Counted from the first letter of the stretch, positions 29,501-64,000 are shown. The stretch: DNA of 64,000 nt from Geosiphon pyriformis uo1 (GCA_016748015.1 JAAOMT010000183.1:78272-142271), one strand, 5' to 3'. The notes: a model not told the origin generated them from the letters alone. Numbers and translations are program-made.

Positions 29501-30113
29501 TCTACCCACCATCAGTTATTGGACTTTCATGTGAATTCTTGGAGAACACTTTCTGGTTCCACTCATGCTTCCTTGTGTGTGTTACAGCTGTTGTCATCTT
29601 GCTTTTCTGGTTCTTCTATGTCTATAGTGCTCTTCAAGAGTTTTGTTTTTGATGGTTGGTTCTGGAAGACCATCTCCATCTTCTGTAATTCCAAATTGGC
29701 TGGTTTGGAAATTGTTAAGTTTATGTGTTCTCTTAATTTAGCTTTTAGAAATAATGTATGGTTGGTTTGTGCTAAGCACTATGTCTATATAGAAAAGCAT
29801 AGTTTGATTCTTTTTGATAATTTGGCTGTCATCTTAGTTTCTGGTTTGTCTTCAGGGTTTTCTGTTGGTGTGGTGAAACTGTTTGGTATGGCTAATGCTT
29901 TTGGTATATGTTTTGGTTTTCGCAAATCTTGTTTATTTTTCTCAGATTTTAGTGGTTTAGTCTCAGTTTACATAGCTGCATAGTGTTGTTTTAACTGGCC
30001 CAAGTGGCTGGTTACATGTAGAAAATGCATGATTCATACCTAGTTTAGATCATTTCTTTGATGTATAATACTAGACTGTGTTTGGACCTCACTCATTAAA
30101 TAAAGAAAAAAAT

Positions 30114-33100
30114 AATGTGATTAATAAGAAAATATCTGCCAAAAGATTAATCAGTTGTTTTTGAGATTTTAAGACTAGTAATACTATTAAATTCAATAAT
30201 ATTAACATAAAAAAAGAGTTTTTAATAAAAAAACCAGTATAAATTATGGCAAAAAGAATGCTTTAAATAGAAAAAACCTGAACTAAATACTAAAAAAAAC
30301 CTAAATTAGTAATCAAGAAAGCATTAAATATATCTTTAAAAAAGATTAAGTTTCTAAGTAAGAATAAAAATAATGTTTTTTGAATGCTCTTATAGTTTTT
30401 TTTTTTTTAAAGAATTTAGTCAATGTATCTGTTAAGAAATTTTTTATTTTAAATATTAATTTAAATACTGTGATAAGAATTTTTTTTCAAAATAAGTTAA
30501 AAATAATTAAGAAATTGTTTTTTAGTATTAATAATTTTAAAAAAACTTCTACTTTTTTAAAATTTGTTGTAATTATTCATGTATTGTTTATTTTCAAATC
30601 AAGCTTGAAACAAATAATAGAAAAAACAAAAACTATAGACATTTTAGTAAATATCAATCTTAGAAAATTAGCTATATATTCAAATTGAGTTGTAATAGTC
30701 AAAGAAATTCCAGTAAAAATATTAATAAAGACTGTGTATATTGTATTATCTAAATTTGAGATGATTAAATTGATTAAAATACAATTAATAAGACTATGAC
30801 AAAAAACAATTATTGAATTTGGACAATCAAATTATGCTGGTTTAGTCATAATAAAATAATATATTTTAATTAGAAAAAATAATGTACAGTTTACTAAGAT
30901 TAATAAAAATAAAAAAACATAAAATACTAAAAACAATAATAGAATACTATTATATACTTTTTTTGTAAAAACAAATATACATAATTTCTGAAATTTTTTA
31001 GAGTTTATTAATAAAAAAACTTCTATTATATATTAGAATTCAGTAATATATGCTAAAACCAGATATGTTGTAGTGTGTTTTAAATTAAAATTTGTATTAG
31101 ATACTACTATAAAAACAACACCAATGTTAAGAAATACTAATTTGTATTGGTTTTATTTGGGTTCAGCCAAATGTGTTAAGTATAAAAATTTAAGTTATAT
31201 ATTATTAAGTTGTGCTATTAGTAAGAAAGTTTTTCTTAGTAATTTGTCTTATAAAGTTTTTTCAGAAACAGATAAAGCAGACTGATAACTATTTATGCCA
31301 AAAAATAAGTTTTTATTATTTGTTAGTGTTCTTTAATAGTGTGTTTTAAGCAAAGATTGTTAATAGTTTTTTATTTTTCTCTTTTTATAAGCAAAATAAT
31401 TTGTTAAAAGTTGGCTTTTTTTCAGAGATAAAGTTTTTTCTACTGATTATATTGAATATTAATAATAGATTTGTAGTTTTTAAATGCAGTTTTACTGATT
31501 TTATAGAACAAATTAGTAAGTTAATAGAAAGATTAAATGTACTTAAGTCAATGTTTCCCAATTATGCCCTAGATATTAGTCATTAGTAACTTTTTTATTA
31601 CAAGATCAAAAGATAAATATAGCAATGAATAAAAATTTAAATATAATTACTAGTAACAAAACTATAACAAAAAAAATTTTTTTTTATCTTAAAATATTAT
31701 TAAATTGAAAATAAGCATAAACAATTTGTTTAATATAGTTATAAGTCTGTTAATCAAAGTAGAAAATATTGGTTTAAGTTTAGATATTTTTTTCTATTAA
31801 TGATTAATTTAATTAAAAAAGTTGCTATATGTAATATTTAAAGTATTAATGTTCTTATTAAGCAGAAAAATATTGTTTATTAATATATAAATTCAAATAA
31901 CATGATTTTTATTATTATAAAAACAAAATTAAGGTTTAGTATTAAGTTATAGATTATAAATAAGTTTAATGAGGTCTGAATTTTTACATTTTGTTTGAAT
32001 AAATGTTTTTTTGATGTTAAAATGACTATTATTATGAACAGTTTTTTGACTTAACATGTTTTAAGAGTAAAGAAAATTTTTGGTTGAATTATTTCTGTCT
32101 GATTTTTGTTTAAAAATACTCTTTTAGTCACAATTTTTGGTCTGTATACTGGTGTTTCTGTTAAAACCAAATTTGGTTAGGTGTTAAAAGTTAATTTTTT
32201 TATTGCCAAATTAGTTAATTTTAGCTTTTTTGTAGTTTTAAATGTAAATTTTAATAAAAATAGATTAAAAAAACATGCAAACTTTAGGTTCTGCTTGAAT
32301 TTGGATTTAGTTAATTTCTTTAATAGCCATTTATTAGTTAAAACTTTTATATAAAACAAATTTAAAACTATTAAAAAAATCATTGATTATATTTTTGTGA
32401 ATAAAAATTTGTTATCTGTAATTGTTAATTATAAAGTCTATTTTATATTTGAATTTTTTGATACTAATTATAAATATTTTGGTTTTGGTTAGTCTAAAAA
32501 ATTTTTTAAATGTTTGTTTAAACAGCATGCACAAATAAGCTAACAAAAATTATTAGAAGTTTAAAATAAAAAAAGCAAATAAGTCCAAATAAACACATTT
32601 TAAGAAGTGGTTTTTTACTAAGCTTTTATTAAAGTTAAGTAAATTTATGAATACTAAGAGTTTTAGTAATTTAAATATCATGTAAGAGATACTAAAAGAG
32701 GTAATAATAGATTTAATTAATGAAATGTTTTTTAAACATTAGTTTAGTAAAGTTGATTGCTTAAAAAACAAGCAATTTTCAAAGTTTTTCAAGTTAAAAC
32801 TGTTGGTTTTTAAGATTGTTAAAAGATTAAGTTTAGATAATAAGTTTGAGTTTGATTGTTTTATCAAAACTTGGTTGTTTATTAACAGTACTAAGGCTTT
32901 AAAAGTTTGTATTATGATTTAAAATAGCACTAAAACAATAAGTATTATTAAATATTTATTAATGATCAAAAAAATTTATAGAAAATTCAAATACTATAAG
33001 TTAAAGACTATTAAGAATATATTTATTAAAAAGACAATCAAAAAGCATATAAAAAATTTTGCTTTAACAAAAGACACATAATAAAAAGTATTTTAGAAAA

Positions 33101-35480
33101 ACTTTTTTACAAAGTAGTTCTTAATTATTTAATAGTAAGAAAAAAGTTGATTTTAGAGCCAAGTAAAATAAAGCTTGAAATTAACAAAATTATAGAGAAT
33201 TGAACAAAAAAGTAAATTGTGTCTTTGGTATTACTTGATCTGTAGTTTCATTAATATACATTCTTAAAATATATAAATAATATTGTTTTTTAAATATAAT
33301 AAAAGTAATTAGCATAGATAAATTGGTTCTGATAATTAAAAATCTGCTTAATAACAAAGCTACTAATTTGTTTAGTATATTTAATAGACTTTAAAAACAT
33401 TGTAATAATATAATAATAAAGTGTTTTTTAATTCTATTAAACTTTTGTCTAATTTTTAAAAATGTTCTAATTGTTTAAAAAAAAACATGAATTTCAATAA
33501 TTTTTAAGTTTTATAAATGGAATAGCATTTTAACAAATACTTAATCTATTGTATTAATTAAAACTGTTAAAAAAATTCTGTTCAAAATTTTTTCAAATTA
33601 AATTTCTTTGGTTTGTAACAAATTTGGTGTTCTTTAAAGTGATATTTTTTTGGTTTAAAAGATATTTCAACTTAATTTCCTGTGTTTGCTGTTGGTTTAG
33701 TAATTAAAAATGTTTTAAAAAAACAAAAAGCTCTAATTAATATTACAAAATATGCACAAAGCATATAATTTGGTTAGATAATATTATTTAAAGACTAATT
33801 TACTGTACATTAAAATATATGACTAATTTATTAAATTTTTTGATAATATATATAGAGAAAGAATAAACAGAGTAATAACTAATTTTGGGTTTTTAGAAAG
33901 TTATAGAATACATAATAGACTAAATTAGAGTAAAGTTTTTTTGCTTCTTTTTTGAATAATTTTTTATAATTTTTTTTGGTATAAGATTAAGAAACATAAT
34001 ATTAAGTTTGTAACTAAAACTAACAAAGTAGAAAATATTAAGAGAAAATATTATTTTTTACAGCAAGTGTCTTTGTTAATAACATGATTTGGATTAAGAA
34101 TAGTTAGACTACTATGCAATATATTTTGAATATAACTAGCAAATTTTTTAGAATTAATAATATTTTAATTAATAATAAAAAAATAGTGGTTATTTTTATT
34201 AATTAAAATATAAGAATGACTTCTTTAAAGATTAGTAACTTACCAATTTAAATTGTTAAAAAGGGTAAACCATATAAATATTTAAGAATTTTTTTATCAA
34301 CTAAAGAACTGTTAAAGCTAAATATAATTAAGACTTATTTTGATATCTGATTTTTTATTAATATGGTGCTAAAAAAAGCAATTATAGATAAACAATTTTT
34401 GTATTTGATGTTAACAATTTTGTAGCTTATAGTTAATTATTATTTGCAGTTTATTTTTATTTTAGTAAATATATATTATAAATAAAATGTTATAATTAAG
34501 AAGAATCTTAAGTCAAAAGCCAATTTGCTATAGGATTTTTTTAATAATGTTTTGCATGATTTTTTTTTGTATGGGTTGAAGACTTTTAAGTAAGTACAAA
34601 TTAAGAAAAAATTGGCTGTGGTAATTGTTTTTTCTAATGCTACAAGTATTTTTAAATGGCTCTTTAATTACAGATTGCAAATTTTAGAGTAGGTTTTATT
34701 AAAATTTTTGCAGTATTCTGTCAGATTGCAGATTAATTCTGTAAACAATTTTTTGGCTAAGATAGTTGGACTGTTTTTGGAGAATAATTTGTCTTTGTTA
34801 AATAATTTGCTAAGTGTGTTTTATTATCTTAATAAATAAAAAAGATGCTATTATGGACTAAAAAATATTTTATAAATAAAAAAAGTTAGATCTAAAGAGA
34901 CTAATGCCTTTTTAATTTAGATTAATATCAAATTTTTTGCATAATAATGGTTTTATTGATACCAATTTTGGCCAATTTAGTGGTTATGTGGTTTGAATAT
35001 TTTGGAATCTAAAAAATTTCCTAAAGTTTAAATAAATGTTATTAAAGTATATATAAATAAGTTTTTGAATGGTTTAAATTCTATAGAAGTAATTAGTAAG
35101 ACTGTTGTATACTTTTCAGCAATGAATATAGGAATGTATATGAGTTTTTATTTTTTACAATAGTCAAATTACAGACAGTTGTTTTAGTTTTGGAATATAT
35201 ACCAGCTTTCTGTGCAGTAATTTTATACTTAAATAAACAAATAATTATTAATATATGTGTTTTTGAATTAAATTTTAATATATTAAACTTTTATAATTAT
35301 TGCTGAGTAGAAAAAAGACATATTTTCAATTTGATTAAAGATAAAAATTAAGAGTTATTTAAGAATTTCAGATAATAACAGAACTAATTTATTAACATAA
35401 AAAACTGTTTATTTTTTCTATTCCTTGCTAAATAATATATGTAAATATTTTATTATGGTTAAGAAAATGATAATATCTAA
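30114..35480 (+). mobile_element. LINE B: heavily AT-eroded relic related to LINE A (partial ORF1, APE, RT, part of RNase H)
   Basis: Residual homology: LKNLVNVSVKK (ORF1), KVAICNI at ~31820 (APE), RT-like segments at 33350-34100, RNase H-like segment at ~35040-35400. Confidence 0.8.
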
Positions 35481-38290
35481 GATCTATCTGCTTTTATTTG
35501 CATCAGACAAAACTTTATAATATGTGCCACTAAAAAAATTTTATTTATTTATAGTATAGCTTAATAACATATAATCCAAATTTTTATACTTTACATATTT
35601 GGCAGAGCCCAAATAAAACCAGCATAGATTAATACTTCTTAATATTGATGTAATTTCTATAACAGTATTTAATAACTTAACAAAAATCAAAACAAACAAT
35701 TACATATCTGGCTTAAGTGTTGTTACCAATAATTTTTGTCAATATTTGAAACCATTTCTTAACTCAACTAGTAACACATATTACTATAATTATGCTATTG
35801 ACTATAGTATATTATGGGTATATAGACTATTTTAATAAGTGGAAAAGTGAAAGAAAGTACATAATAAAGTTATTAAAAGTGAAAAAAAATATTGTTATTA
35901 TTATTTGTTTTTGGGTAAGAACCAGTTTTAGGTATTTTAAAAAGGAAAAAAAAGTCACATCTCTTTATATGTATTAAAAGTGCAATCAACAACAAAAGTA
36001 AAACCAACTACTTTAATAAATACATAATCAGAATTTTTTTAATTAGTCATCAAAAGGGTGTGGTATTCAAATGTTCAGCTTTGAAAGTGAAGGTATAAGA
36101 ATTATAAAAGGGTTGTAAAAGTAAAACATAACTGAAATAAATTTTGATTAAACTTTTTATTGTTGAAACCACTCTCTAATAATATAATATTTTATTATTT
36201 ATTTTAATATTTTAACAACTTGTTTAATAAAACAAGACTTAATGTGAAATGGTGATAACACATAATTTGAAAGATCAAAAGTAATAGAAAAACTTAAAAT
36301 AATAATAACAAGTAAGTAAAAAATTATAACAACATAATTTCAAATAGTAATAAAAAATATGTAAAGGCATACTTGAGATTGTGATAAAAAGTATTTGGAG
36401 TATAGAAAGAGGAAAAAAAAATGAGGTATAAAAGAAAAAACTAACTGCTTACTATAAAACTATAGTAAAGAATTGGTTTAGTATTTAACTAATACTTTTC
36501 TGAATTGACAGAGAGATTATACATATAGCTAAATTACATCAAATCTACATACTATATTAGGACTATTTAAAATATATTAATTATTTATATATATTGAATT
36601 AATTAATTCATAATGAGCTTACTTGGCTTGTTATTTATCCAAGAGCTAGTAATTTAGATAATCAGATTTAAATGGCTGAATTTAGAACATTAATCATAAA
36701 TCAATGATACCAATTGTAATTATGATCAACATAATTAGAAATAAATTAATTGATTATATTTCTTAGTAACTAGTTTTAATCATTAATCACAGATCCAGAA
36801 TATTGAATTGTTTTAATAAAGACATATGAAAATCTTGGAGGATAACAAAGTCTGTTGTTATCTGATTACATACATCAATTATTTATTTCCATTGGTGTTT
36901 TTTAGTTTGCCAAGATTTCTTTGTATCCAACTTAGTTAAACTGTTGAATTGTGCCATATTTTTTTGTTGTAATTAAATTGATTGCTGATCATTTATTTTC
37001 AAATTGTCAGCTAATTTTGTTGATTAAGTGCAATGATATAGGTCTTTTTTGCATGATTTTAATGTTAATTTCCATTGTATGTGTTGTAATTTTTGTATTA
37101 AAAAGTGTGAAAATCTTCCAATAATAGTATATATAATTGAATAATAATCAATAACACATGTTTTTTTACTTATTGATTTAATAAAATTTCAGATATCATA
37201 TATATTTATTTTCACTAATAATATATAAAATAACATTTTATTATTATCTTTTATATTTCATAATTTCTTGTTTTTATTAGTTCTAATAATTTATATAACA
37301 TCTTTTTTAATTAGAAAAAACTATTTTATTATAATCAAATTAGCATAATCAAATTATCCAAATTCTATTATAGTCTTTTATTATATTCTTATCAGCTGTA
37401 TTTTGATTGACTTAATTAATCCAAATTCAGATAGTACAGTATATACAGTCTTAATAGATATATCAATTGGTATTTTTTTTATTACTACAGTTTAATTTGA
37501 TTACTTAGTAGATTTTTTAATATTAGTGTTTACCAAAATATTTGCAGCTTTTGTTTTTTCTGTCATTTGTGCCAAACTTGATTTAAATATAAATTATATA
37601 TAAATAATTTCAACAAATTTTAAAAGAGTAAATGCTCTTTTAAAATTATTGATTTTTAAAAACAATTTACTGATTATCATGAGTTTATTTTAAGAAAACT
37701 TCTTAACAATATTATTCAAACCAATATTTAAAGCAAATAATTTTCTAACAGAAACATTAACCAAATTTTTTAGAAGAAAAAAAAGAGCTAGTAAAATATT
37801 TAATAAAACATTATCATTATTATTATTTAAGAAGTTAATTTTCTTTAATAATATACTCAAAGCTTTTTTGGTTTTATTCATGGAATTTTTAGTGTTTAAT
37901 TAGAATTTTTTTCTTTAAAAGCATTTTTTTTACCATAGTCAACACTAGTTTCTTTTACTAAATACTTTTTTTATATATTAATACTATTGAATTTAGTAGT
38001 ATTATTAGTTTTAGAGTCCCAAAAATGACCATCTAAATCTCTATTATAAATCATTTTGTTACTAATACTGTTTTTTAAAACATTTTTTTTTTTCTAGAAA
38101 GAATATATTTGTTATCACTGCCAAAACCAGGATTCTTGATAAATTTCTTTATAACAATAATACTAAAACCAACAATGGCCTCGTAATTAAGCAGAAAAGA
38201 TTTGGATTTATTGTATTGAATGGTTAAAAACTTTTTTTCAACAAATGTACTCTTTGGTGAATTATGAACATAGGAGAAAAAAGAGGTTTG
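35481..38290 (-). mobile_element. LINE D: 5' UTR and ORF1 portion of an eroded LINE, split by a 1.4-kb insertion
   Basis: Reverse complement matches the LINE A/B 5' end and ORF1 (LKNLVNVSVRKLFALNI at 37690-37881; KKTCVID..IY|..ARYVIVCF rejoined across 35721-37126). Confidence 0.75.
35721..37126. mobile_element. LTR-type insertion (solo LTR or internally deleted element of another family)
   Basis: Ends tgtta...taata as in the Gypsy LTRs; 4-bp TSD gtgt/gtat; removing it restores LINE D ORF1. Confidence 0.6.
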
Positions 38291-56055: not shown

Positions 56056-56903
56056 GAAACTTGATGGTGAATTGTGATTTCCGTTGGTATCCTGCGTGTT
56101 AATTTGTGGACTTTAATTTTCAGTAATCCCGCCCCCTTACATAGGTTACAAATCTCGCCCTATAAAACCCGTCCTTTTAAGCACTCATTTCCACACTTTG
56201 ACATTTATCCTAATTATATTATAAGTTTGACCCACAGCAAGAGAATATGAAGTATATTCCTCACTACGCTTTTATCCTGAGCTTCTCACGTCTCAACATT
56301 TCGATCTTTTTACTGTGAGAGCGGCTTCATTAGTTTTTTTTTGAATTGCTTTGATAAATGATAATTTTTTTATTGAATTTATGCATATCAACCATTTTAT
56401 TATCAATGCAAGCATAGCATTGGCTAAATTTGAGATACATTTTTACTGTTTCGCGTATTCCTTTGACATGTATTAGCTTATATTATAAACTTCTGTAACT
56501 TTTCCTAAAAATTATGTAAAATTGAGCAATATAGGTTAGGAACTGGGTAAATTTAACGAAAAATTTGTGCTTGAGATAGAATTTCATAATTGCACTTTTC
56601 ATTATGCTCTCAATTTTCCCTTGGCTTGAAATTATATATACATATATGTATTAATATATTTAAATACGTCTCAGTTGGATTACACCTTAACCATTGATTA
56701 GATTAGTTGAGACAATAATATAACCCCTTCTAAAATGAAAAAATTTAAGGTTGAAAATGCAATTATGTAGGATAATCGATAAACTGAATTATCCAATAGA
56801 ATTTAATTCTGGTTATCGTCGATCCGCCGTATCATAGTATAAATCAAGTTTTCCAGGCTGAGTTCTGATATTGTTTATCATTCGATTCCTAATTTTATTG
56901 TTC

Positions 56904-58370
56904 ATGTTAAAAATGGCACTTCAGCTACCAAAACCTGGAATTCTGCTCTCATACATTTTTCAAAAGCTTTTGTATTCATCGCCTCGACCTAAAGGAATTC
57001 CATTGAGGAAATCTTCATACTCATCATCAATAGGTCCTAAATCAAAGGAATTCACCGTTCTCGGAATAGAAACCTCATGTGATGATACAGGAGTTGGTAT
57101 CGTAAGATCAAATGGTCATATTTTGAGTGACGTCATTCAATTACAGCAAGAGCTACATGAACCAATGGGTGGTATTGTTCCAACATTAGCAATGCAAGCT
57201 CATCAGAGTCATTTACCCCTTACTATCATAAAAGCGTTAAATGAAGCGAAATTGAATGTGATGAATGATATTGATGTAATCGCTGCCACCAGAGGACCAG
57301 GTCTATCACCCTGTTTAAATGTAGGCCTAATTGCGGGAAAAGTGTTGGCAGCAGCTCTAAGGTATCGAATTCATATTGTCTTAGTAAAAGAAAATAGCTG
57401 GCTTGAAACTCATTCATATCAATTATACATGAACAAGGAAACCATTGATTGGAGTTCACCATATGGCATGTAACTAATTGGTGATCATTTATAACAAAAT
57501 AGAAGGCTATGTAATTATATTTGAATTATTTATTTAAAGGAAGCTCATGCTTTAACAGTACGGCTCACCAATAAAGAGTTAAAGTTTCCCTTTATGGCGC
57601 TGCTCATATCTGGTGGCCACACTTTAATTCTCATAGTGCATGGAGTTAATCATTATACGCAACTTGGTACAACGCTTGATGATTCTATTGGAGAAGCATA
57701 CGATAAGATTGCTCGTTTTTTAAAGTTAAATTGGACCAAAGGTCGGGGTGGAGGGCTTGGTGAGGCTTTGGAAAAGGCTGCTTTCGACGGAGACCCGAGA
57801 AAGTATTCCCTTCCAACGCCAATGACGAAGACCAAGCAAACAAAAGAATGTCCCAATTTAAGCTTTAGTGGACTAAAAACTTCAACAATTTTATTAGTAG
57901 AAAAAGAAAAATTGGACATTGAAGATCTTCAAGTGAAAAGAGACATTGCAGCTGCATTTCAATTCACAGCGATACAACATTTGATAAATAAATTGGTGCT
58001 GGCTTTTGAATGGTGCAAAAAACGAAATATTTCATTGACAGCTTTGGTTGTGAGCGGAGGGGTAGCACGTAATAAAGCCATTCGTATGAGGTAACTTACC
58101 CTACCTTTTTCACAGTAAAGTTCTTTTGAAACTGTCATGCTCAATTCCACGCACGAATTCACATACAGTCTAGAAAAGACTGCACTTGATCGATACAGCT
58201 TGCAATTGATTTGTCCAGCACCTCACTTATGTTCCGATAATGGGGTCATGATCGCATGGGCAGGTGTTGAACGTTATCGAGTTGGGCTAGTAGATGATTA
58301 TACAATTAATCACATCCCTAAATGGCCTATTGAAAATCTAGGTTCAGGTCCGATGCAAAGTCCCCGATGA
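56904..58370 (+). CDS. QRI7: Mitochondrial tRNA N6-threonylcarbamoyltransferase (Qri7/OSGEPL1)
   Basis: Basic presequence, VLGIETSCDDTG, TRGPGL, HHMEAH, LLISGGHT, DDSIGEAYDK, SFSGLKT, CSDNGVMIAWAG; three introns. Confidence 0.93.
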
Positions 58371-60479: not shown

Positions 60480-60940
60480 TTTTTTTTGTTAATTTTCTGG
60501 CCATAATGAAAGCTAAAGATTTGCTGAGAATATAGCTTTTTCTTTTTCTTTTACACTTTATTTTTATTAGCTATTTTCTTCCAAATACCTATTTTTGTCA
60601 TGATAAAACTGACAAGCACATCTGCTGGTAGTTTGAGTTTTGATTTGACTGGTTTGGGAACCTATTTAAGCACCAAAAAAAAACATGTAAACAATGTTTA
60701 CTCTTATAGTGTGTTTTACAAAAAACCAAAAAAGTCTGTAGTTGGTAATATGATTAACTTGTTAACTGACTCTTTAAGCTTAAATAATATTGGTAGCATC
60801 AGTGTTGAACCTGTAATGTTCTGGAGTAGTAAAGTTGGCAATGTTGTAAATAGTATTAATGATCTGTTAAATGTCAAAAATATGAAAAACACAATTGCTA
60901 AGGAAACAAGCTATGTAGATTTAGATACATCAGTAAATAA
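60480..60940 (+). mobile_element. 5' stub of another LINE (5' UTR and start of ORF1)
   Basis: T-rich start resembling the LINE A/D 5' ends; AKETSYVD parallels VEKTSFQQ of LINE A ORF1. Confidence 0.55.
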
Positions 60941-61823
60941 TATTATTTATAAAATATAGAAATTATATATTAATACATAAAATAACCAATCAAAATAGAC
61001 ATAATAAAAGTGGAATTCCAGAATTCTTCTCAAAAAAATTGCAAGATTTCAGAATTATAGGATTCCTGTATAAAGAATTACAAAATTTCAGAATTACAAA
61101 ATTTTTTTTGAGAAATTACAGAATTTTAGAAATTTCAAGATTCTTAATTAAAGAATTAAGAAATTCAAAGAATCTTGTATAATGAAATTTATGTATATAT
61201 AACAGTAGTATTAGAAGCAGAAAAAGATAAAATCTTTAGTTTAGAACTTTCAGTTTCAATTTTATATCCATTCTTTTATATGATAATATTTTATAACTTA
61301 AAATAGAAACATTAAATATCAATAAAATACTTATTATTATCACAATCTATCTTTTCACTATCAACAATTTATGTTAATAACTGCTGATACTTAATTATAC
61401 TGGACCAATAGCTTTTGATCATGGCTATTGATGAGATACTAACTCTTTTCTTGTCTTGGCTTATTTCTTTATTTTTTTTCTTCTCTTTTGTTTTGTTTAT
61501 TAATTGATTAAAGATTAATGCATAGAGTTACTAATGTTAAAAAGACTGGTAAAAGACTCATAAAACAAGGATAAAACATTTATAATTGAGAATAGCTTAT
61601 CAGAAGGATTATTGGCCACCATACTAAGAAAAAAATTTGACAGAATTGTGATTCTGGAAAGCTATGGATAAAACAATACTAAAATCTCTGTCTATTATAC
61701 AAAGAACTCAAACCAAAATTTTCAGATTATGAAAACCTTCAGAAACCAACATTATTATATTAATTAAGCATCAAGTTACAGGTTTGTTATTTATTTCACT
61801 CACCCAAATATTTATTTGTAATA
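60941..61823 (+). repeat. Lone eroded LTR of the Gypsy copy 1 type
   Basis: Colinear with the reverse complement of 13767-14603 (GGAATTCC array, gctattga..atactaa, ggtaaaagac, ctctgtctattatacaaag, ...tgtaata); no matching TSD. Confidence 0.85.
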
Positions 61824-61922
61824 ACAGATGTCCAAAAAAATTATTATCAGATTAAAGCACTTATTTTGTAAACAGAACATTAACAGAATTAAGTCAAAAA
61901 GACTATTATCATTATTATATCA
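61824..61922 (+). mobile_element. Gypsy integrase core fragment
   Basis: Matches 24220-24330 (RCPK.LLSD..T.FVNRTLTELSQ/KR.LS). Confidence 0.75.
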
Positions 61923-63386
61923 CTTTTGTAAACCACTCAATTTCTTAAAAAAAATTCCCAACACGGAATTAAGATCTAAGTATTGAAAGCCTTTGCCGTT
62001 TTCATAGCACTGAACTTTGTTTAATCCCGCTGTACTTGATTTTTTCACAACTTTAACAATATGATCCACACAATCTACTGTTGTTTTTCGATAAAGCTTT
62101 TTAATCGATCCAAAACTACCATCACACTTAAATTTGGTATGTCCAGGTACCATGAAATTTAATTCGATACTTTCGTAATAACCGCAAATTACTAAATATA
62201 GGTAAAATCAAATGGTGGCATTATTTTTATTCTGACCACCCGCATTATCACAAGTAATCTTTAGATGTTTTTCGCCTTTATTCAGTCTCTTAATTCCATT
62301 GAATACCATGCTCAGGGTGCCATTAGGGCCTTCCCTATTATTTTGTTCGCGTACTGCTTCATCTTGGATACCAAATAAGTGTACTTTACGCGGACTGAGA
62401 TAGTAAATTTTATTTACTTGTTGATCGGAATGGGGTACGTGAACATTTTGCGCTCAATCGTAACTGTAATGCGCAGTAGCGTCAATGCTGCAATAATCAG
62501 CTTTAGCTCTTGTTCTAAAATGCTCATCCACCAATTTCCTCTGTTGTTCTGCTAGTTTCGTATTTTTGTTGTAATAGTTTCTCTCTAATTTAGCCTTAAC
62601 TAGATGTTCTTTGAATTTTTTCAATAAATCTTTCGCCTCTTCTTCTTTGCGAGCATTGTATTGTAAGCCATTCCGAAAATGTTGACAAGTATCGCATAAA
62701 TCCGTTCGTGGACTCATGATTTGAATATAAGGCGTTAATTGGTGTCATAACTTGCGGAACGCATCATATTTTAACAATTTCAACGTGCTATTATTTTCGA
62801 GACCTGCAATAAAATCGCGATAGACCGATTTATAACTCGTTTCGGCTGGCAAAAGTGTAAGCGATTGAGTAATTCGGTTGACGTTCCTACCCGGACTTGG
62901 TAATCCATGAATTTCAGCATAGTTTTCAAGAAAATTCTTCACGGCGATGGCAACGGTTATATCAATGGTTATTTTGGTTTTCCATCGCGGCATTCGTTTT
63001 ATATTACCGTGAACACGTGGTATTATACCATTCGTCGCCAAGTGATTTCTGACGTTTTCGTAGTGAGTGCGACCAATTCCTAACATATTGAGATACGTTT
63101 TCTGGCAAAGAGGCGTATTGCGATCTCAATAATAAAACGTTCGCTTATTAGTACGTGTTTTCTTTTTAAGGCGTCGACTGGCAGTTATTTCTCCACCATT
63201 CATTACTTTCAACTGGGCCATTAAAAATATATCTTGTTCGGATCTAGAAAGAGCTTGAAACACTTCACGTAATTCGGCAAACCTTTCTCTCGGAATCATT
63301 TTTGAACAACCACAATTACAGCCTATCTCCAAGAAAGGCATTGCTTTTTCGTATTCGGTAAAACTATTATATTCATTATTTTTCAT
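61920..63386 (-). mobile_element. Sola1-like DDD DNA transposase, 3'-truncated, four in-frame TGA
   Basis: TDLCDTC, SYD*AQNVHVP, LFGIQDE, CDNAGGQNKNN, PGHTKFKCDGSFG.IK. The four track ORFs (starts 63386, 63086, 62717, 62153) share one frame. No TIR identified. Confidence 0.8.
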
Positions 63387-63766
63387 ATACAGGTACTCCT
63401 TTATATAATTTTATCACTTCTTTATTCCTTTTCATCAATCATGCTTAGTTTTTAAATGAATGAATGGACATGTTTTGTTATCCAGGAGAAAATCTCGCTG
63501 CATACTACTTACTCATCACTATCATGAACATCATTTCCTATGCCAGCAGACGTTGTCGTGGCCATGATTCAGTTTCAAAAAATAGAAAGCTGAACTGATT
63601 CGGGACAAATCAGACCATTCACATTTCTTAGGACAGCAATGATATATGTAAACTTGTGACATAACAATAAACTTACTCAGGAGAAGGCACGAATTCTTCG
63701 TATAATTAAGAATTTATTTAAAATTTGCTGGAGAAATGCATAAGTTGCAACATATCCGAATGCACA

Positions 63767-63989
63767 CTATTCATATTCTTCAGGCCATTCCTCATCTTGT
63801 TCCGCTTGCTCATCAGATTTCCATCTTTTATTAAACAAATAATCCTTCGCGTCTTCATCATTGTCATTATTGATCTCCTTTGCCCTGTTGAAATATTCGC
63901 GTTAATTATGAAGTCTTATTACTGTGAAGAGGAAGGAATATGACAGTTACCTTTTGGTAGCATGAGAGCCATAGACAACTGGAAACATC
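63767..63989 (-). CDS. Last two exons of an unidentified host gene entering from the right edge
   Basis: Exons 63989-63951 and 63884-63767 with GT-AG intron give MFPVVYGSHATKRAKEINND...EEWPEEYE*. Confidence 0.45.
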
Positions 63990-64000
63990 CTACATATAAA

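What the first reader, a model, noticed from the sequence alone, without database searches (positions are those of the whole stretch)
61920..63400. Nuclear Sola-like transposase that appears to be written in genetic code 4 (TGA = Trp)
Seen: 63386-61920 is one 489-codon frame. Its only internal stops are four TGAs (FYY*DR, RKL*HQ, SYD*AQ, ATI*FY); the only TGG is in PRWKT. There is no TAA or TAG, at least seven CGA codons are intact, the motif glycines are intact and CpG is abundant, whereas neighbouring TEs are CpG-depleted and carry many TAA/TAG stops. An AAGGAG lies 9 nt before the ATG. Known: Mycoplasma-type Mollicutes and many fungal mitochondria read TGA as Trp, and Glomeromycotina host Mollicutes-related endobacteria that exchange genes with the host. 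Inference: the four TGAs stand at Trp positions, and a eukaryote-type transposon lived in a code-4 genome before landing here untranslatable, i.e. a host-endosymbiont transposon shuttle. Caveats: TGG-to-stop decay does occur in element C, and the EQNNREG segment looks deleted, so this copy has some decay.
Basis: partly seen in the sequence, partly recalled or inferred. Interest (0 to 1): 0.85.

Follow-up and report, generated by a model that had tools for sequence, protein, structure and literature searches.

The report
Bacterial-code transposon fragment in fungal nucleus
A broken copy of a jumping gene in a fungal chromosome spells tryptophan as TGA, as the fungus's Mycoplasma-like endobacteria do. 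Its relatives show that the gene has long been kept working in that bacterial code, which points to transposon traffic between bacterium and host nucleus.

Summary
Window 63386-61920 (-) is a 489-codon frame. Its only stops are TGA at codons 87, 214, 311, 393 and 489; it has one TGG, no TAA/TAG, and CpG o/e 1.41.

It is a dead 5' fragment of a DUF7869/Sola-like DDD transposase. It is cut at codon 489 and carries a 27-nt deletion in a conserved motif. It lacks ORF2, and no terminal repeat lies in the window. The genome holds at least 45 copies.

The code-4 reading holds:
- TGA at codons 87 and 393 is shared by all copies.
- TGG replaces TGA at each of the four sites in some close relative.
- Copies differ almost only synonymously (dN/dS 0.07-0.15).
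- TAA/TAG are ten-fold depleted (5 seen, 53 expected).

Relatives with TGA at all four sites lie in a Candidatus Moeniiplasma glomeromycotorum contig between restriction-modification genes. An 86.5% identical copy with the same TGA pattern sits in Diversispora eburnea.

Complete nuclear copies have ~300-bp terminal inverted repeats and 4-bp target duplications.

Most likely the active lineage lives in the endobacteria and nuclear copies are repeated arrivals. No member of the nuclear clade has yet been seen in a bacterial genome.

This scan already reported the same phenomenon on other copies in this genome. I found no paper describing it.

The parts
61923..63386 (-). Transposase gene fragment, codons 1-488 of about 575 (DUF7869/Sola-like DDD transposase), readable only with TGA = Trp
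   Evidence: frame; PF25273, E 2.2e-7, 31.1 bits against a cut-off of 26, on 61923-62207; at least 45 genomic copies at 72-93% identity
63126..63128 (-). TGA codon 87. TGA in every copy of the family, in the Moeniiplasma copy and in soil code-4 contigs; TGG in relative L080
62745..62747 (-). TGA codon 214. This is a strongly conserved Trp column. Most sister copies have TGG here, so the TGA is recent in this lineage
   Evidence: (place 62745 reads C on the + strand, i.e. TGG, in the other copies of all four runs)
62454..62456 (-). TGA codon 311, next to the first catalytic Asp (SYD-W-AQ). Copies carry either TGA or TGG
62208..62210 (-). TGA codon 393 (NNATI-W-FYL). TGA in all Geosiphon copies; TGG in L047, L079 and L080
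62982..62984 (-). The only TGG (codon 135)
62457..62459 (-). Asp310, the candidate first catalytic Asp (HYSYD motif), intact
62247..62249 (-). Asp380 in CDNAGGQNKN, the candidate second catalytic Asp, intact
62121..62123 (-). Asp422 in GHTKFKCDG, the candidate third catalytic Asp. This column is invariant in alignment A1. Intact here
62328..62348 (-). Site of a 27-nt in-frame deletion (EQNNREG) that removes the conserved INYVLDE..GK segment
63387..63425 (-). Conserved leader of the module (gtgataaaattatata-AGGA..GTAT), including AAGGAG at 63401-63396. Similarity to all other copies begins here
61920..61922 (-). TGA at the truncation junction. Family homology stops at 61922. The last 86 codons, ORF2 and the right terminal repeat are missing
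60935..61823 (.). Unrelated, very abundant genomic repeat that follows the truncation point
   Evidence: 7255 first-look candidates; copies 66-83% identical
63483..64000 (-). Single-copy upstream DNA holding the end of an intron-containing, transcribed gene (stop at 63769-63767, intron 63950-63885). Its transcript runs into the first 100 nt of the transposase frame

Best explanation
The feature is a dead, 3'-truncated copy (about 1.5 kb) of a multi-copy cut-and-paste transposon family of the DUF7869/Sola-like DDD type.

Shown:
- The family's transposase, and its second gene, are written in translation table 4 (TGA = Trp).
- The fragment sits in a nuclear chromosome of Geosiphon pyriformis.
- The TGA codons are sense codons that have been maintained, created and reverted (TGG<->TGA) while the protein stayed under strong purifying selection.
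- Relatives lie in genomes of Mollicutes-related endobacteria.
- Near relatives lie in nuclear assemblies of distantly related Glomeromycotina.
- Complete nuclear copies have terminal inverted repeats and 4-bp target-site duplications.

Inferred:
- The replicating lineage lives where TGA is read as Trp, that is, in the endobacteria.
- Copies reach the nucleus repeatedly and recently, integrate by transposition, and are then untranslatable there: a standard-code ribosome stops at codon 87.
- They then decay.

This particular copy cannot work in any code. It lacks a conserved 9-residue segment, its last 86 codons and ORF2, and no terminal repeat lies within the window. It now lies in the 3' untranslated region of an upstream host-type gene.
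For: Anatomy.

Family. The genome holds at least 45 copies. TGA is fixed at codons 87 and 393, and TGA/TGG are mixed at 214 and 311.

Selection.
- Pairwise dN/dS is 0.04-0.17 among copies 81-93% identical, at dS 0.18-0.72.
- Window against the Diversispora copy: dN 0.036, dS 0.606.
- In 18 little-decayed copies, 1863 substitutions created only 5 TAA/TAG against 52.9 +/- 6.9 expected. TGG>TGA occurred 6 times, TGA>TGG 4 times, and TGG>TAG and TGA>TAA 0 times.

Trp columns.

Endobacterial relatives.
- P0181 and P0225 are named Candidatus Moeniiplasma glomeromycotorum, and P0246 GvMRE.
- Locus L076 lies on a 124.8-kb contig. It is flanked by type I and type III restriction-modification genes that hold 51 TGA and 18 TGG in frame.
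- Soil contig L047 is code-4 throughout.

Tree. The code-4 clade (SH-aLRT 99) splits into a nuclear group and an endobacterial group, beside a standard-code Glomeromycotina clade.

Nuclear setting.
- The contig is 924 kb, with an intron-bearing Kae1/Qri7-like gene at 56871-58094.
- A separate short-read contig of run X1 bridges the 5' junction, 63286-64000.

Recent arrival. CpG o/e is 1.41, against 0-0.5 in neighbouring repeats.

Transposition hallmarks in full copies. TIRs are about 300 bp. TSDs are AATT in C725 and ATAT in C718, and 3 of 4 bases match in C673.
Against: - No member of the nuclear clade (B1) has been seen in a verified endobacterial genome. The bacterial copies (B2) are only 51-55% identical to the window protein.
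- The assembly shows no bacterial 16S among the scored candidates.
- Two scans of GTDB species genomes found no Mollicutes hit.
- TIR plus TSD insertions in fungal DNA need a transposase acting in the nucleus, which a bacterium-made enzyme would have to reach.
- Full copies carry host-like kinase genes in the standard code inside the TIRs. That implies time spent in, or exchange with, the nucleus.
- If runs X2 and X3 are RNA, family members are transcribed in the fungus.
- Most copies carry frameshifts.
Confidence: 0.7

Rival explanations
1. The family is resident and active in the fungal nucleus. Its TGA codons are decoded there, by stop-codon readthrough with near-cognate tRNA-Trp or by an unrecognised UGA-suppressor tRNA. 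The endobacterial copies would be a side branch.
For: Complete copies have TIRs and 4-bp TSDs in fungal DNA and carry standard-code host-like kinase genes. The nuclear and bacterial clades are separate in the tree. A transcript reaches the ORF in this locus. No bacterial 16S was found in the assembly.
Against: - New TGA codons arose from TGG (214, 311) and were kept under continued purifying selection. That change is neutral only where TGA is a normal Trp codon.
- Reading through two to five TGAs would multiply the losses.
- The bases after the TGAs (G, C, G, T) share no readthrough context.
- There is no tRNA gene in ten loci or in the window, and no tRNA-Sec above threshold in the genome.
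- ORF2 uses 8 TGA and 0 TGG, the codon bias of an AT-rich code-4 genome.
- A Diversispora copy nests within the Geosiphon diversity, which needs a horizontal vector in any case.
Confidence: 0.12
2. The code-4 compartment is not the Mollicutes-related endobacteria. It is the mitochondrion, a mitochondrial plasmid, or another TGA=Trp replicon, and the nuclear copies are NUMT-like arrivals.
For: Fungal mitochondria also read TGA as Trp (established knowledge). The B1 clade has not been placed in any bacterial genome.
Against: The nearest non-nuclear relatives lie among bacterial restriction-modification genes in a Moeniiplasma contig, and on a fully code-4, gene-dense soil contig. Another relative shares a contig with a UvrB fragment. 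All genomic copies found lie on large nuclear-type contigs. No DDE transposon of this type is known from fungal mitochondria (my knowledge).
Confidence: 0.05
3. This is an ordinary nuclear transposon. Its founder happened to carry TGG>TGA nonsense mutations and was amplified non-autonomously, with further G-to-A decay.
For: G-to-A and C-to-T changes dominate in older copies, where TGG has become TAA. Most copies have frameshifts.
Against: dN/dS is about 0.1. There is a ten-fold deficit of TAA/TAG. TGA reverts to TGG. The same TGA sites occur in bacterial and soil relatives only about 50% identical. For the window alone, the chance is about 8e-5.
Confidence: 0.03
4. This is an assembly chimera or endobacterial contamination, and the element is not in the fungal chromosome.
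For: Fungal assemblies can contain endobacterial contigs (PMC11423566).
Against: The window lies in a 924-kb contig with intron-bearing host genes. It is flanked by a fungal high-copy repeat and by single-copy expressed DNA. A short-read contig bridges the 5' junction. Dozens of copies sit in different large contigs. The 3' junction was not individually bridged in the pieces shown.
Confidence: 0.02

Closest known systems
Sola superfamily of eukaryotic and bacterial DNA transposons (Bao, Jurka and Kapitonov 2009). Reported in Rhizophagus irregularis and thought to be horizontally acquired in fungi (PMC5751038; classification in PMC4455052)
   Same: A three-Asp motif set (D310, D380, D422). TIR ends. 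4-bp target duplications in full copies. Patchy, Glomeromycotina-centred distribution in fungi. From memory of the 2009 abstract, Sola was also noted in bacteria.
   Different: The genes here are written in code 4 although the copies sit in nuclear DNA. Membership in Sola1, 2 or 3 could not be tested without Repbase profiles. Earlier notes of this scan disagree on Sola1 versus Sola2.
Pfam PF25273 (DUF7869)
   Same: The window's last piece scores above the curated cut-off. The relatives carry the domain.
   Different: The Pfam entry is a domain of unknown function. It says nothing about genetic code or mobility.
Endosymbiont- or organelle-to-nucleus DNA transfer (NUMTs, Wolbachia insertions), and gene exchange between Mollicutes-related endobacteria and AM fungi (Naito 2015 and Torres-Cortes 2015, as cited in PMC5982333)
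   Same: DNA written for another compartment's translation system lies dead in the nucleus. The same host-symbiont pair is already known to exchange genes.
   Different: Here the transferred unit is itself a TIR transposon that inserts with target duplications, is multi-copy, and carries host-type genes. Published exchange is mainly fungus-to-bacterium gene capture. I found no paper on a code-4 transposon in the nucleus.
Mitoviruses with in-frame UGA(Trp) codons (title of PMC9965874; paper not read here). Nuclear-integrated copies are from my own knowledge.
   Same: The genetic code acts as a marker of the compartment in which a selfish element is translated.
   Different: Those are RNA viruses of mitochondria. 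This is a DNA transposon linked to endobacteria.
Bacterial insertion sequences with programmed frameshifting (IS1, IS3)
   Same: The two bacterial or soil copies examined split the transposase into two overlapping frames at an A10 run. The start codon lies close behind a short AT-rich leader.
   Different: The nuclear-clade copies have a single frame with A6 at that place. Frameshifting is untested and could be a homopolymer sequencing error.

Membership tests
Pfam DUF7869 (PF25273) | Whole-protein score above the curated gathering cut-off | tested here: met
   window 61923-62207 (-) scores 31.1 bits against a cut-off of 26, E 2.2e-7, on profile positions 80-164 of 192. The domain is precomputed on P0005, P0181 and others.
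Sola superfamily | DDD catalytic triad in an RNase H-like transposase | tested here: inconclusive
   Three conserved Asp are intact: D310 in (Y/F)D(W/F/Y)AQ, D380 in DNxxGQNKN, and D422 in GHTKFxxD, which is invariant in A1. Their catalytic role and the fold were not tested.
Sola superfamily | Terminal inverted repeats and 4-bp target-site duplication | tested here: met
   Met for full copies in the same genome: TIRs of about 300 bp; TSD AATT (C725), ATAT (C718), and 3 of 4 bases in C673. The window copy itself has no terminus.
Sola superfamily | Significant sequence similarity to reference Sola1, Sola2 or Sola3 transposases | not testable with these tools
   Repbase and the Majorek profiles are not available. 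No paper mentions DUF7869.
Gene written in translation table 4 (TGA = Trp) | In-frame TGA at columns that are Trp (TGG) in relatives, with no TAA or TAG | tested here: met
   Each of the four sites is TGG in at least one close relative. Codon 214 is W in 11 of 12 standard-code homologues.
Gene written in translation table 4 (TGA = Trp) | Purifying selection across the TGA codons (the frame is functional when read through) | tested here: met
   dN/dS is 0.04-0.17 among copies 81-93% identical and 0.06 against Diversispora. Five TAA/TAG were observed against 53 expected.
Element of Mollicutes-related endobacteria | Copies located in a bona fide endobacterial chromosome | tested here: inconclusive
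   Met for the sister clade: L076 in a Candidatus Moeniiplasma glomeromycotorum contig among R-M genes with 51 TGA and 18 TGG. Not met for the clade that holds the window copy. GTDB scans were blank for Mollicutes.
Functional (autonomous) transposon copy | Complete transposase, both termini, no disabling lesions | tested here: not met
   The copy is truncated at codon 489. It has a 27-nt deletion in a conserved motif, and no TIR lies in the window.

The most novel reading that the evidence does not exclude
The family is a working inter-kingdom shuttle. Its transposase is made only inside the Mycoplasma-like endobacteria, where TGA = Trp. Its TIR-bounded DNA is nevertheless inserted with 4-bp target duplications into fungal chromosomes. 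It picks up host genes such as kinases and carries them back to the bacteria. It spreads between distant mycorrhizal fungi together with the bacteria. The genetic code would then serve as a built-in switch that keeps the element silent in the nucleus.
Probability: 0.35. Interest if true: 0.92.

Novelty: new variant of a known kind. Interest (0 to 1): 0.8.

Why it matters

This is a eukaryote-type cut-and-paste transposon kept functional in the bacterial code. It occurs in bacterial genomes and, with insertion footprints, in the chromosomes of fungi from different orders. It also carries host-type genes. It is therefore a concrete, testable candidate vehicle.

The family also offers a natural marker. 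TGA against TGG tells in which compartment a mobile element has been evolving. Because the copies are so alike across fungal orders, they could also be used to trace how the endobacteria move between hosts.

The window copy itself is only a dead fragment. Its value is as one more dated, junction-verified insertion of the family.

Tried and rejected
- GTDB species-genome scans. The single-protein scan found nothing. The profile scan found only 31-36% relatives in MAGs labelled Stappiaceae, Desulfobacterales HSG2, Ekhidna and 'bacterium Vin_4', and no Mollicutes. These were not pursued.
- Context of the GvMRE protein P0246 could not be fetched. The DNA of the 15-kb contig with P0285 was not available.
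- The long 'open frames' of 1000+ aa beside partial copies are artefacts of withheld N stretches.
- A bacterial 16S search of the assembly gave only 1.8-kb hits at 390-540 bits. I read these as 18S-type genes, not as an endobacterium.
- tRNA scans of the window and ten loci gave none. The tRNA-Sec model gave one sub-threshold hit. A whole-genome search for a tRNA-Trp with a UCA anticodon was not possible.
- No terminal-repeat motif lies in the window. Sequence beyond the window's end is withheld, so a left end further upstream cannot be excluded.
- Literature searches for a code-4 nuclear transposon, DUF7869, or Sola in endobacteria found nothing specific. PMC4485128 is not held.
- RIP or APOBEC-like editing as the source of TGA was rejected. 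There is no shared sequence context, and no TGG>TAG change in the 18 little-decayed copies (one TAG among all 30).

Full report
THE OBSERVATION

On the minus strand, window 63386-61920 is a single 489-codon frame. Its only stops are TGA, at codons 87, 214, 311 and 393, plus the closing one at 489. There is one TGG (codon 135) and no TAA or TAG. Seven CGA, 15 CAA and 5 CAG codons are intact. CpG o/e is 1.41, against 0.00-0.54 in the window's repeat-rich bins. AAGGAG lies 9 nt before the ATG. If nonsense codons arose by equal-rate transitions, four out of four being TGG>TGA has a chance of about 8e-5.

WHAT THE COPY IS

The last piece of the frame matches Pfam DUF7869 above its curated cut-off.

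The genome is 128 Mb in 792 contigs. NCBI names and a matching contig length of 1,616,357 identify it as Geosiphon pyriformis. It holds at least 45 DNA copies at 72-93% identity.

Comparison with longer copies shows the following.
- The full gene has about 575 codons and ends in TAA.
- It is followed by a second gene of about 310 codons, with 8 TGA and no TGG in the C673 copy.
- Both belong to a conserved 3.3-kb module at the right end of elements 5.7-6.9 kb long.
- These elements have terminal inverted repeats of about 300 bp and 4-bp target duplications: AATT, ATAT, and one 3-of-4 match.
- Upstream of the module the elements differ and carry kinase-like genes in the standard code.

The window copy starts at the module's conserved leader, near 63425. 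It stops matching the family exactly at 61922, so its closing TGA is a junction accident. It lacks 27 nt in the conserved INYVLDE segment, and the window holds no terminal repeat. About 100 bp downstream begins an unrelated, very abundant repeat. The 600 bp upstream are single-copy. The copy is dead in any genetic code.

IS TGA A SENSE CODON?

Across 30 aligned copies:
- Codon 87 is TGA in 25 and TAA in 4, never TGG.
- Codon 393 is TGA in 19 of 20.
- Codon 311 is TGA in 19 and TGG in 6.
- Codons 214 and 135 are mostly TGG, with some TGA.

In close relatives from other sources, each of the four sites is spelt TGG somewhere: 87 in L080; 214, 311 and 393 in L047 and L079; 393 also in L080.

In standard-code homologues, codon 214 is W in 11 of 12. 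Codon 311 is W, F or Y. Codon 393 is W in 4 of 13. Codon 87 is aromatic or hydrophobic.

Pairwise dN/dS in code 4 is 0.04-0.17 among copies 81-93% identical, at dS 0.18-0.72. In 18 little-decayed copies, 1863 substitutions produced 5 TAA/TAG where random placement of the same base changes gives 52.9 +/- 6.9. TGG>TGA occurred 6 times, TGA>TGG 4 times, and TGG>TAG and TGA>TAA never.

New TGAs, at 311 and then at 214, arose inside the family. At 311 they were followed by continued purifying selection. The frame has therefore been evolving as a working gene in a system where TGA and TGG are synonyms. The 'dead founder plus G-to-A decay' reading fails these tests.

WHERE IS THAT SYSTEM?

A HMMER scan of 1.8 billion proteins with an intact 181-residue piece gave 1493 relatives. 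Many were fragments starting just after the TGA sites.

A word-indexed search named three of them as endobacterial. Two are from Candidatus Moeniiplasma glomeromycotorum and one from GvMRE of Glomus versiforme. One lies on a 124.8-kb contig between type III and type I restriction-modification genes. The six neighbouring genes checked hold 51 TGA and 18 TGG in frame. That copy has TGA at all four sites and is 51-55% identical to the window protein.

A 7.3-kb soil contig is code-4 throughout and carries another copy.

In a tree, the code-4 sequences form one clade (SH-aLRT 99). It divides into a nuclear group (Geosiphon, Diversispora, Ambispora, large JGI contigs) and an endobacterial and soil group. 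This clade sits beside a standard-code Glomeromycotina clade (Gigaspora, Rhizophagus), with other eukaryotes outside. The order of events this suggests is eukaryote to endobacterium to nuclei, but the tree is small and quick.

A Diversispora eburnea contig holds a copy 86.5% identical in DNA, with the same four TGAs and the same TGG (dN 0.036, dS 0.606). It is as close to the window copy as other Geosiphon copies are, although, from my own knowledge, the two fungi belong to different orders. Soil and rhizosphere metagenomes hold many relatives at 90% identity or more, of the gene only and not of its flanks.

IS IT REALLY NUCLEAR?

The window is part of a 924-kb contig and carries an intron-bearing Kae1/Qri7-like gene.

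A short-read contig of run X1 covers 63286-64000 without a break, which bridges the 5' junction.

Two 2.5-kb contigs from runs of two different studies lack 63885-63950, a canonical GT..AG intron on the minus strand. They run on to 63286. They also lack 63390-63482, a skip that is not a canonical minus-strand intron. These look like spliced transcripts of the upstream gene that end inside the fragment. The runs' type is not on record, so this is provisional.

The 3' junction was not individually bridged in the pieces shown.

MECHANISM AND RIVALS

I consider it most likely (0.7) that the replicating lineage lives in the endobacteria, and that nuclear copies are repeated, recent arrivals which are untranslatable in the nucleus and then decay.

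Against this:
- The nuclear clade has not been seen in a bacterial genome.
- The assembly shows no bacterial 16S.
- Scans of GTDB species genomes found no Mollicutes.
- Insertion with target duplications needs transposase in the nucleus.
- The elements carry host-type genes.

The main rival (0.12) is nuclear residence with decoding of TGA. I found no tRNA in the elements and no tRNA-Sec above threshold, but I could not make a genome-wide census. Mitochondrial origin, founder decay and an assembly chimera are minor rivals.

WHAT IS KNOWN

Sola elements are described as DDD transposons with 4-bp TSDs, and have been reported from Rhizophagus as likely horizontal arrivals (PMC5751038; PMC4455052; the 2009 abstract from memory). 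Endobacterial genomes are known to hold fungus-derived genes (cited in PMC5982333). Fungal assemblies can contain endobacterial contigs (PMC11423566).

I found no paper on a code-4 transposon in a fungal nucleus. Earlier follow-ups of this scan reported the same phenomenon on other copies in this genome. I re-derived the main claims independently, and added the selection tests, the TGG-at-every-site test, the Diversispora copy and the read-based junction check.

Noticed in passing
L035:7449-8378 (G000:C673), also L078:7640-8626 and L080:3996-4862: A second gene of about 290-330 codons directly follows the transposase in full copies. It is also readable only in code 4 (8 TGA and 0 TGG in C673). 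It has no assigned function and is absent from the window copy.
   Followed up: partly
L076:9986-10070 and L047:1424-1469: In the Moeniiplasma copy and the soil code-4 copy, the transposase is split into two overlapping frames at an A10 run. The nuclear clade has A6 there and a single frame. This could be programmed frameshifting or slippage as in bacterial IS elements, or a homopolymer error.
   Followed up: partly
window 63286-64000 (-): Contigs of runs X2 and X3 lack 63885-63950 (a canonical minus-strand intron). They also lack 63390-63482 (93 nt, 4-nt microhomology), which is not a canonical minus-strand intron. The upstream gene (stop at 63769-63767) seems to be transcribed into the transposase fragment.
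   Followed up: partly
L078:5800-7464 (Diversispora eburnea, CAJVPK010000700.1): A copy 86.5% identical in DNA to the window copy has TGA at the same four sites, plus one CGA>TGA. It is annotated there as a spliced 409-aa gene model that dodges the stops.
   Followed up: yes
L080:2206-3951 (NCBI GCA_009771465.1, organism not shown): A complete 582-codon transposase frame without frameshift has only two TGAs (214, 311) and TGG at 87, 135 and 393. A 440-aa standard-code protein kinase gene precedes it. Its protein cluster has 285 members.
   Followed up: partly
window 60935-61823: An unrelated repeat of about 890 bp has thousands of genomic copies (7255 first-look candidates) and very high depth in run X1.
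   Followed up: no
window 30001-38000: A stretch with 19-20% G+C and almost no CpG (0 CpG in 32001-36000).
   Followed up: no
L051-L075 (GTDB MAGs labelled Stappiaceae, Desulfobacterales HSG2, Ekhidna, Vin_4): DUF7869 relatives at 31-36% identity occur in many copies in MAGs labelled as bacteria. One 'Stappiaceae' MAG has about 100 'chromosomes'. This could be eukaryotic contamination or true bacterial Sola-like elements.
   Followed up: no
G000:C623:201580-201660: A sub-threshold tRNA-Sec-like match (42.7 bits against a cut-off of 47). It is worth checking for a UCA anticodon.
   Followed up: no
window 56871-58094 (+): A host gene fragment resembling the Kae1/Qri7 tRNA threonylcarbamoyl-adenosine enzyme, split by an intron. 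It shows the window is ordinary fungal nuclear DNA.
   Followed up: no
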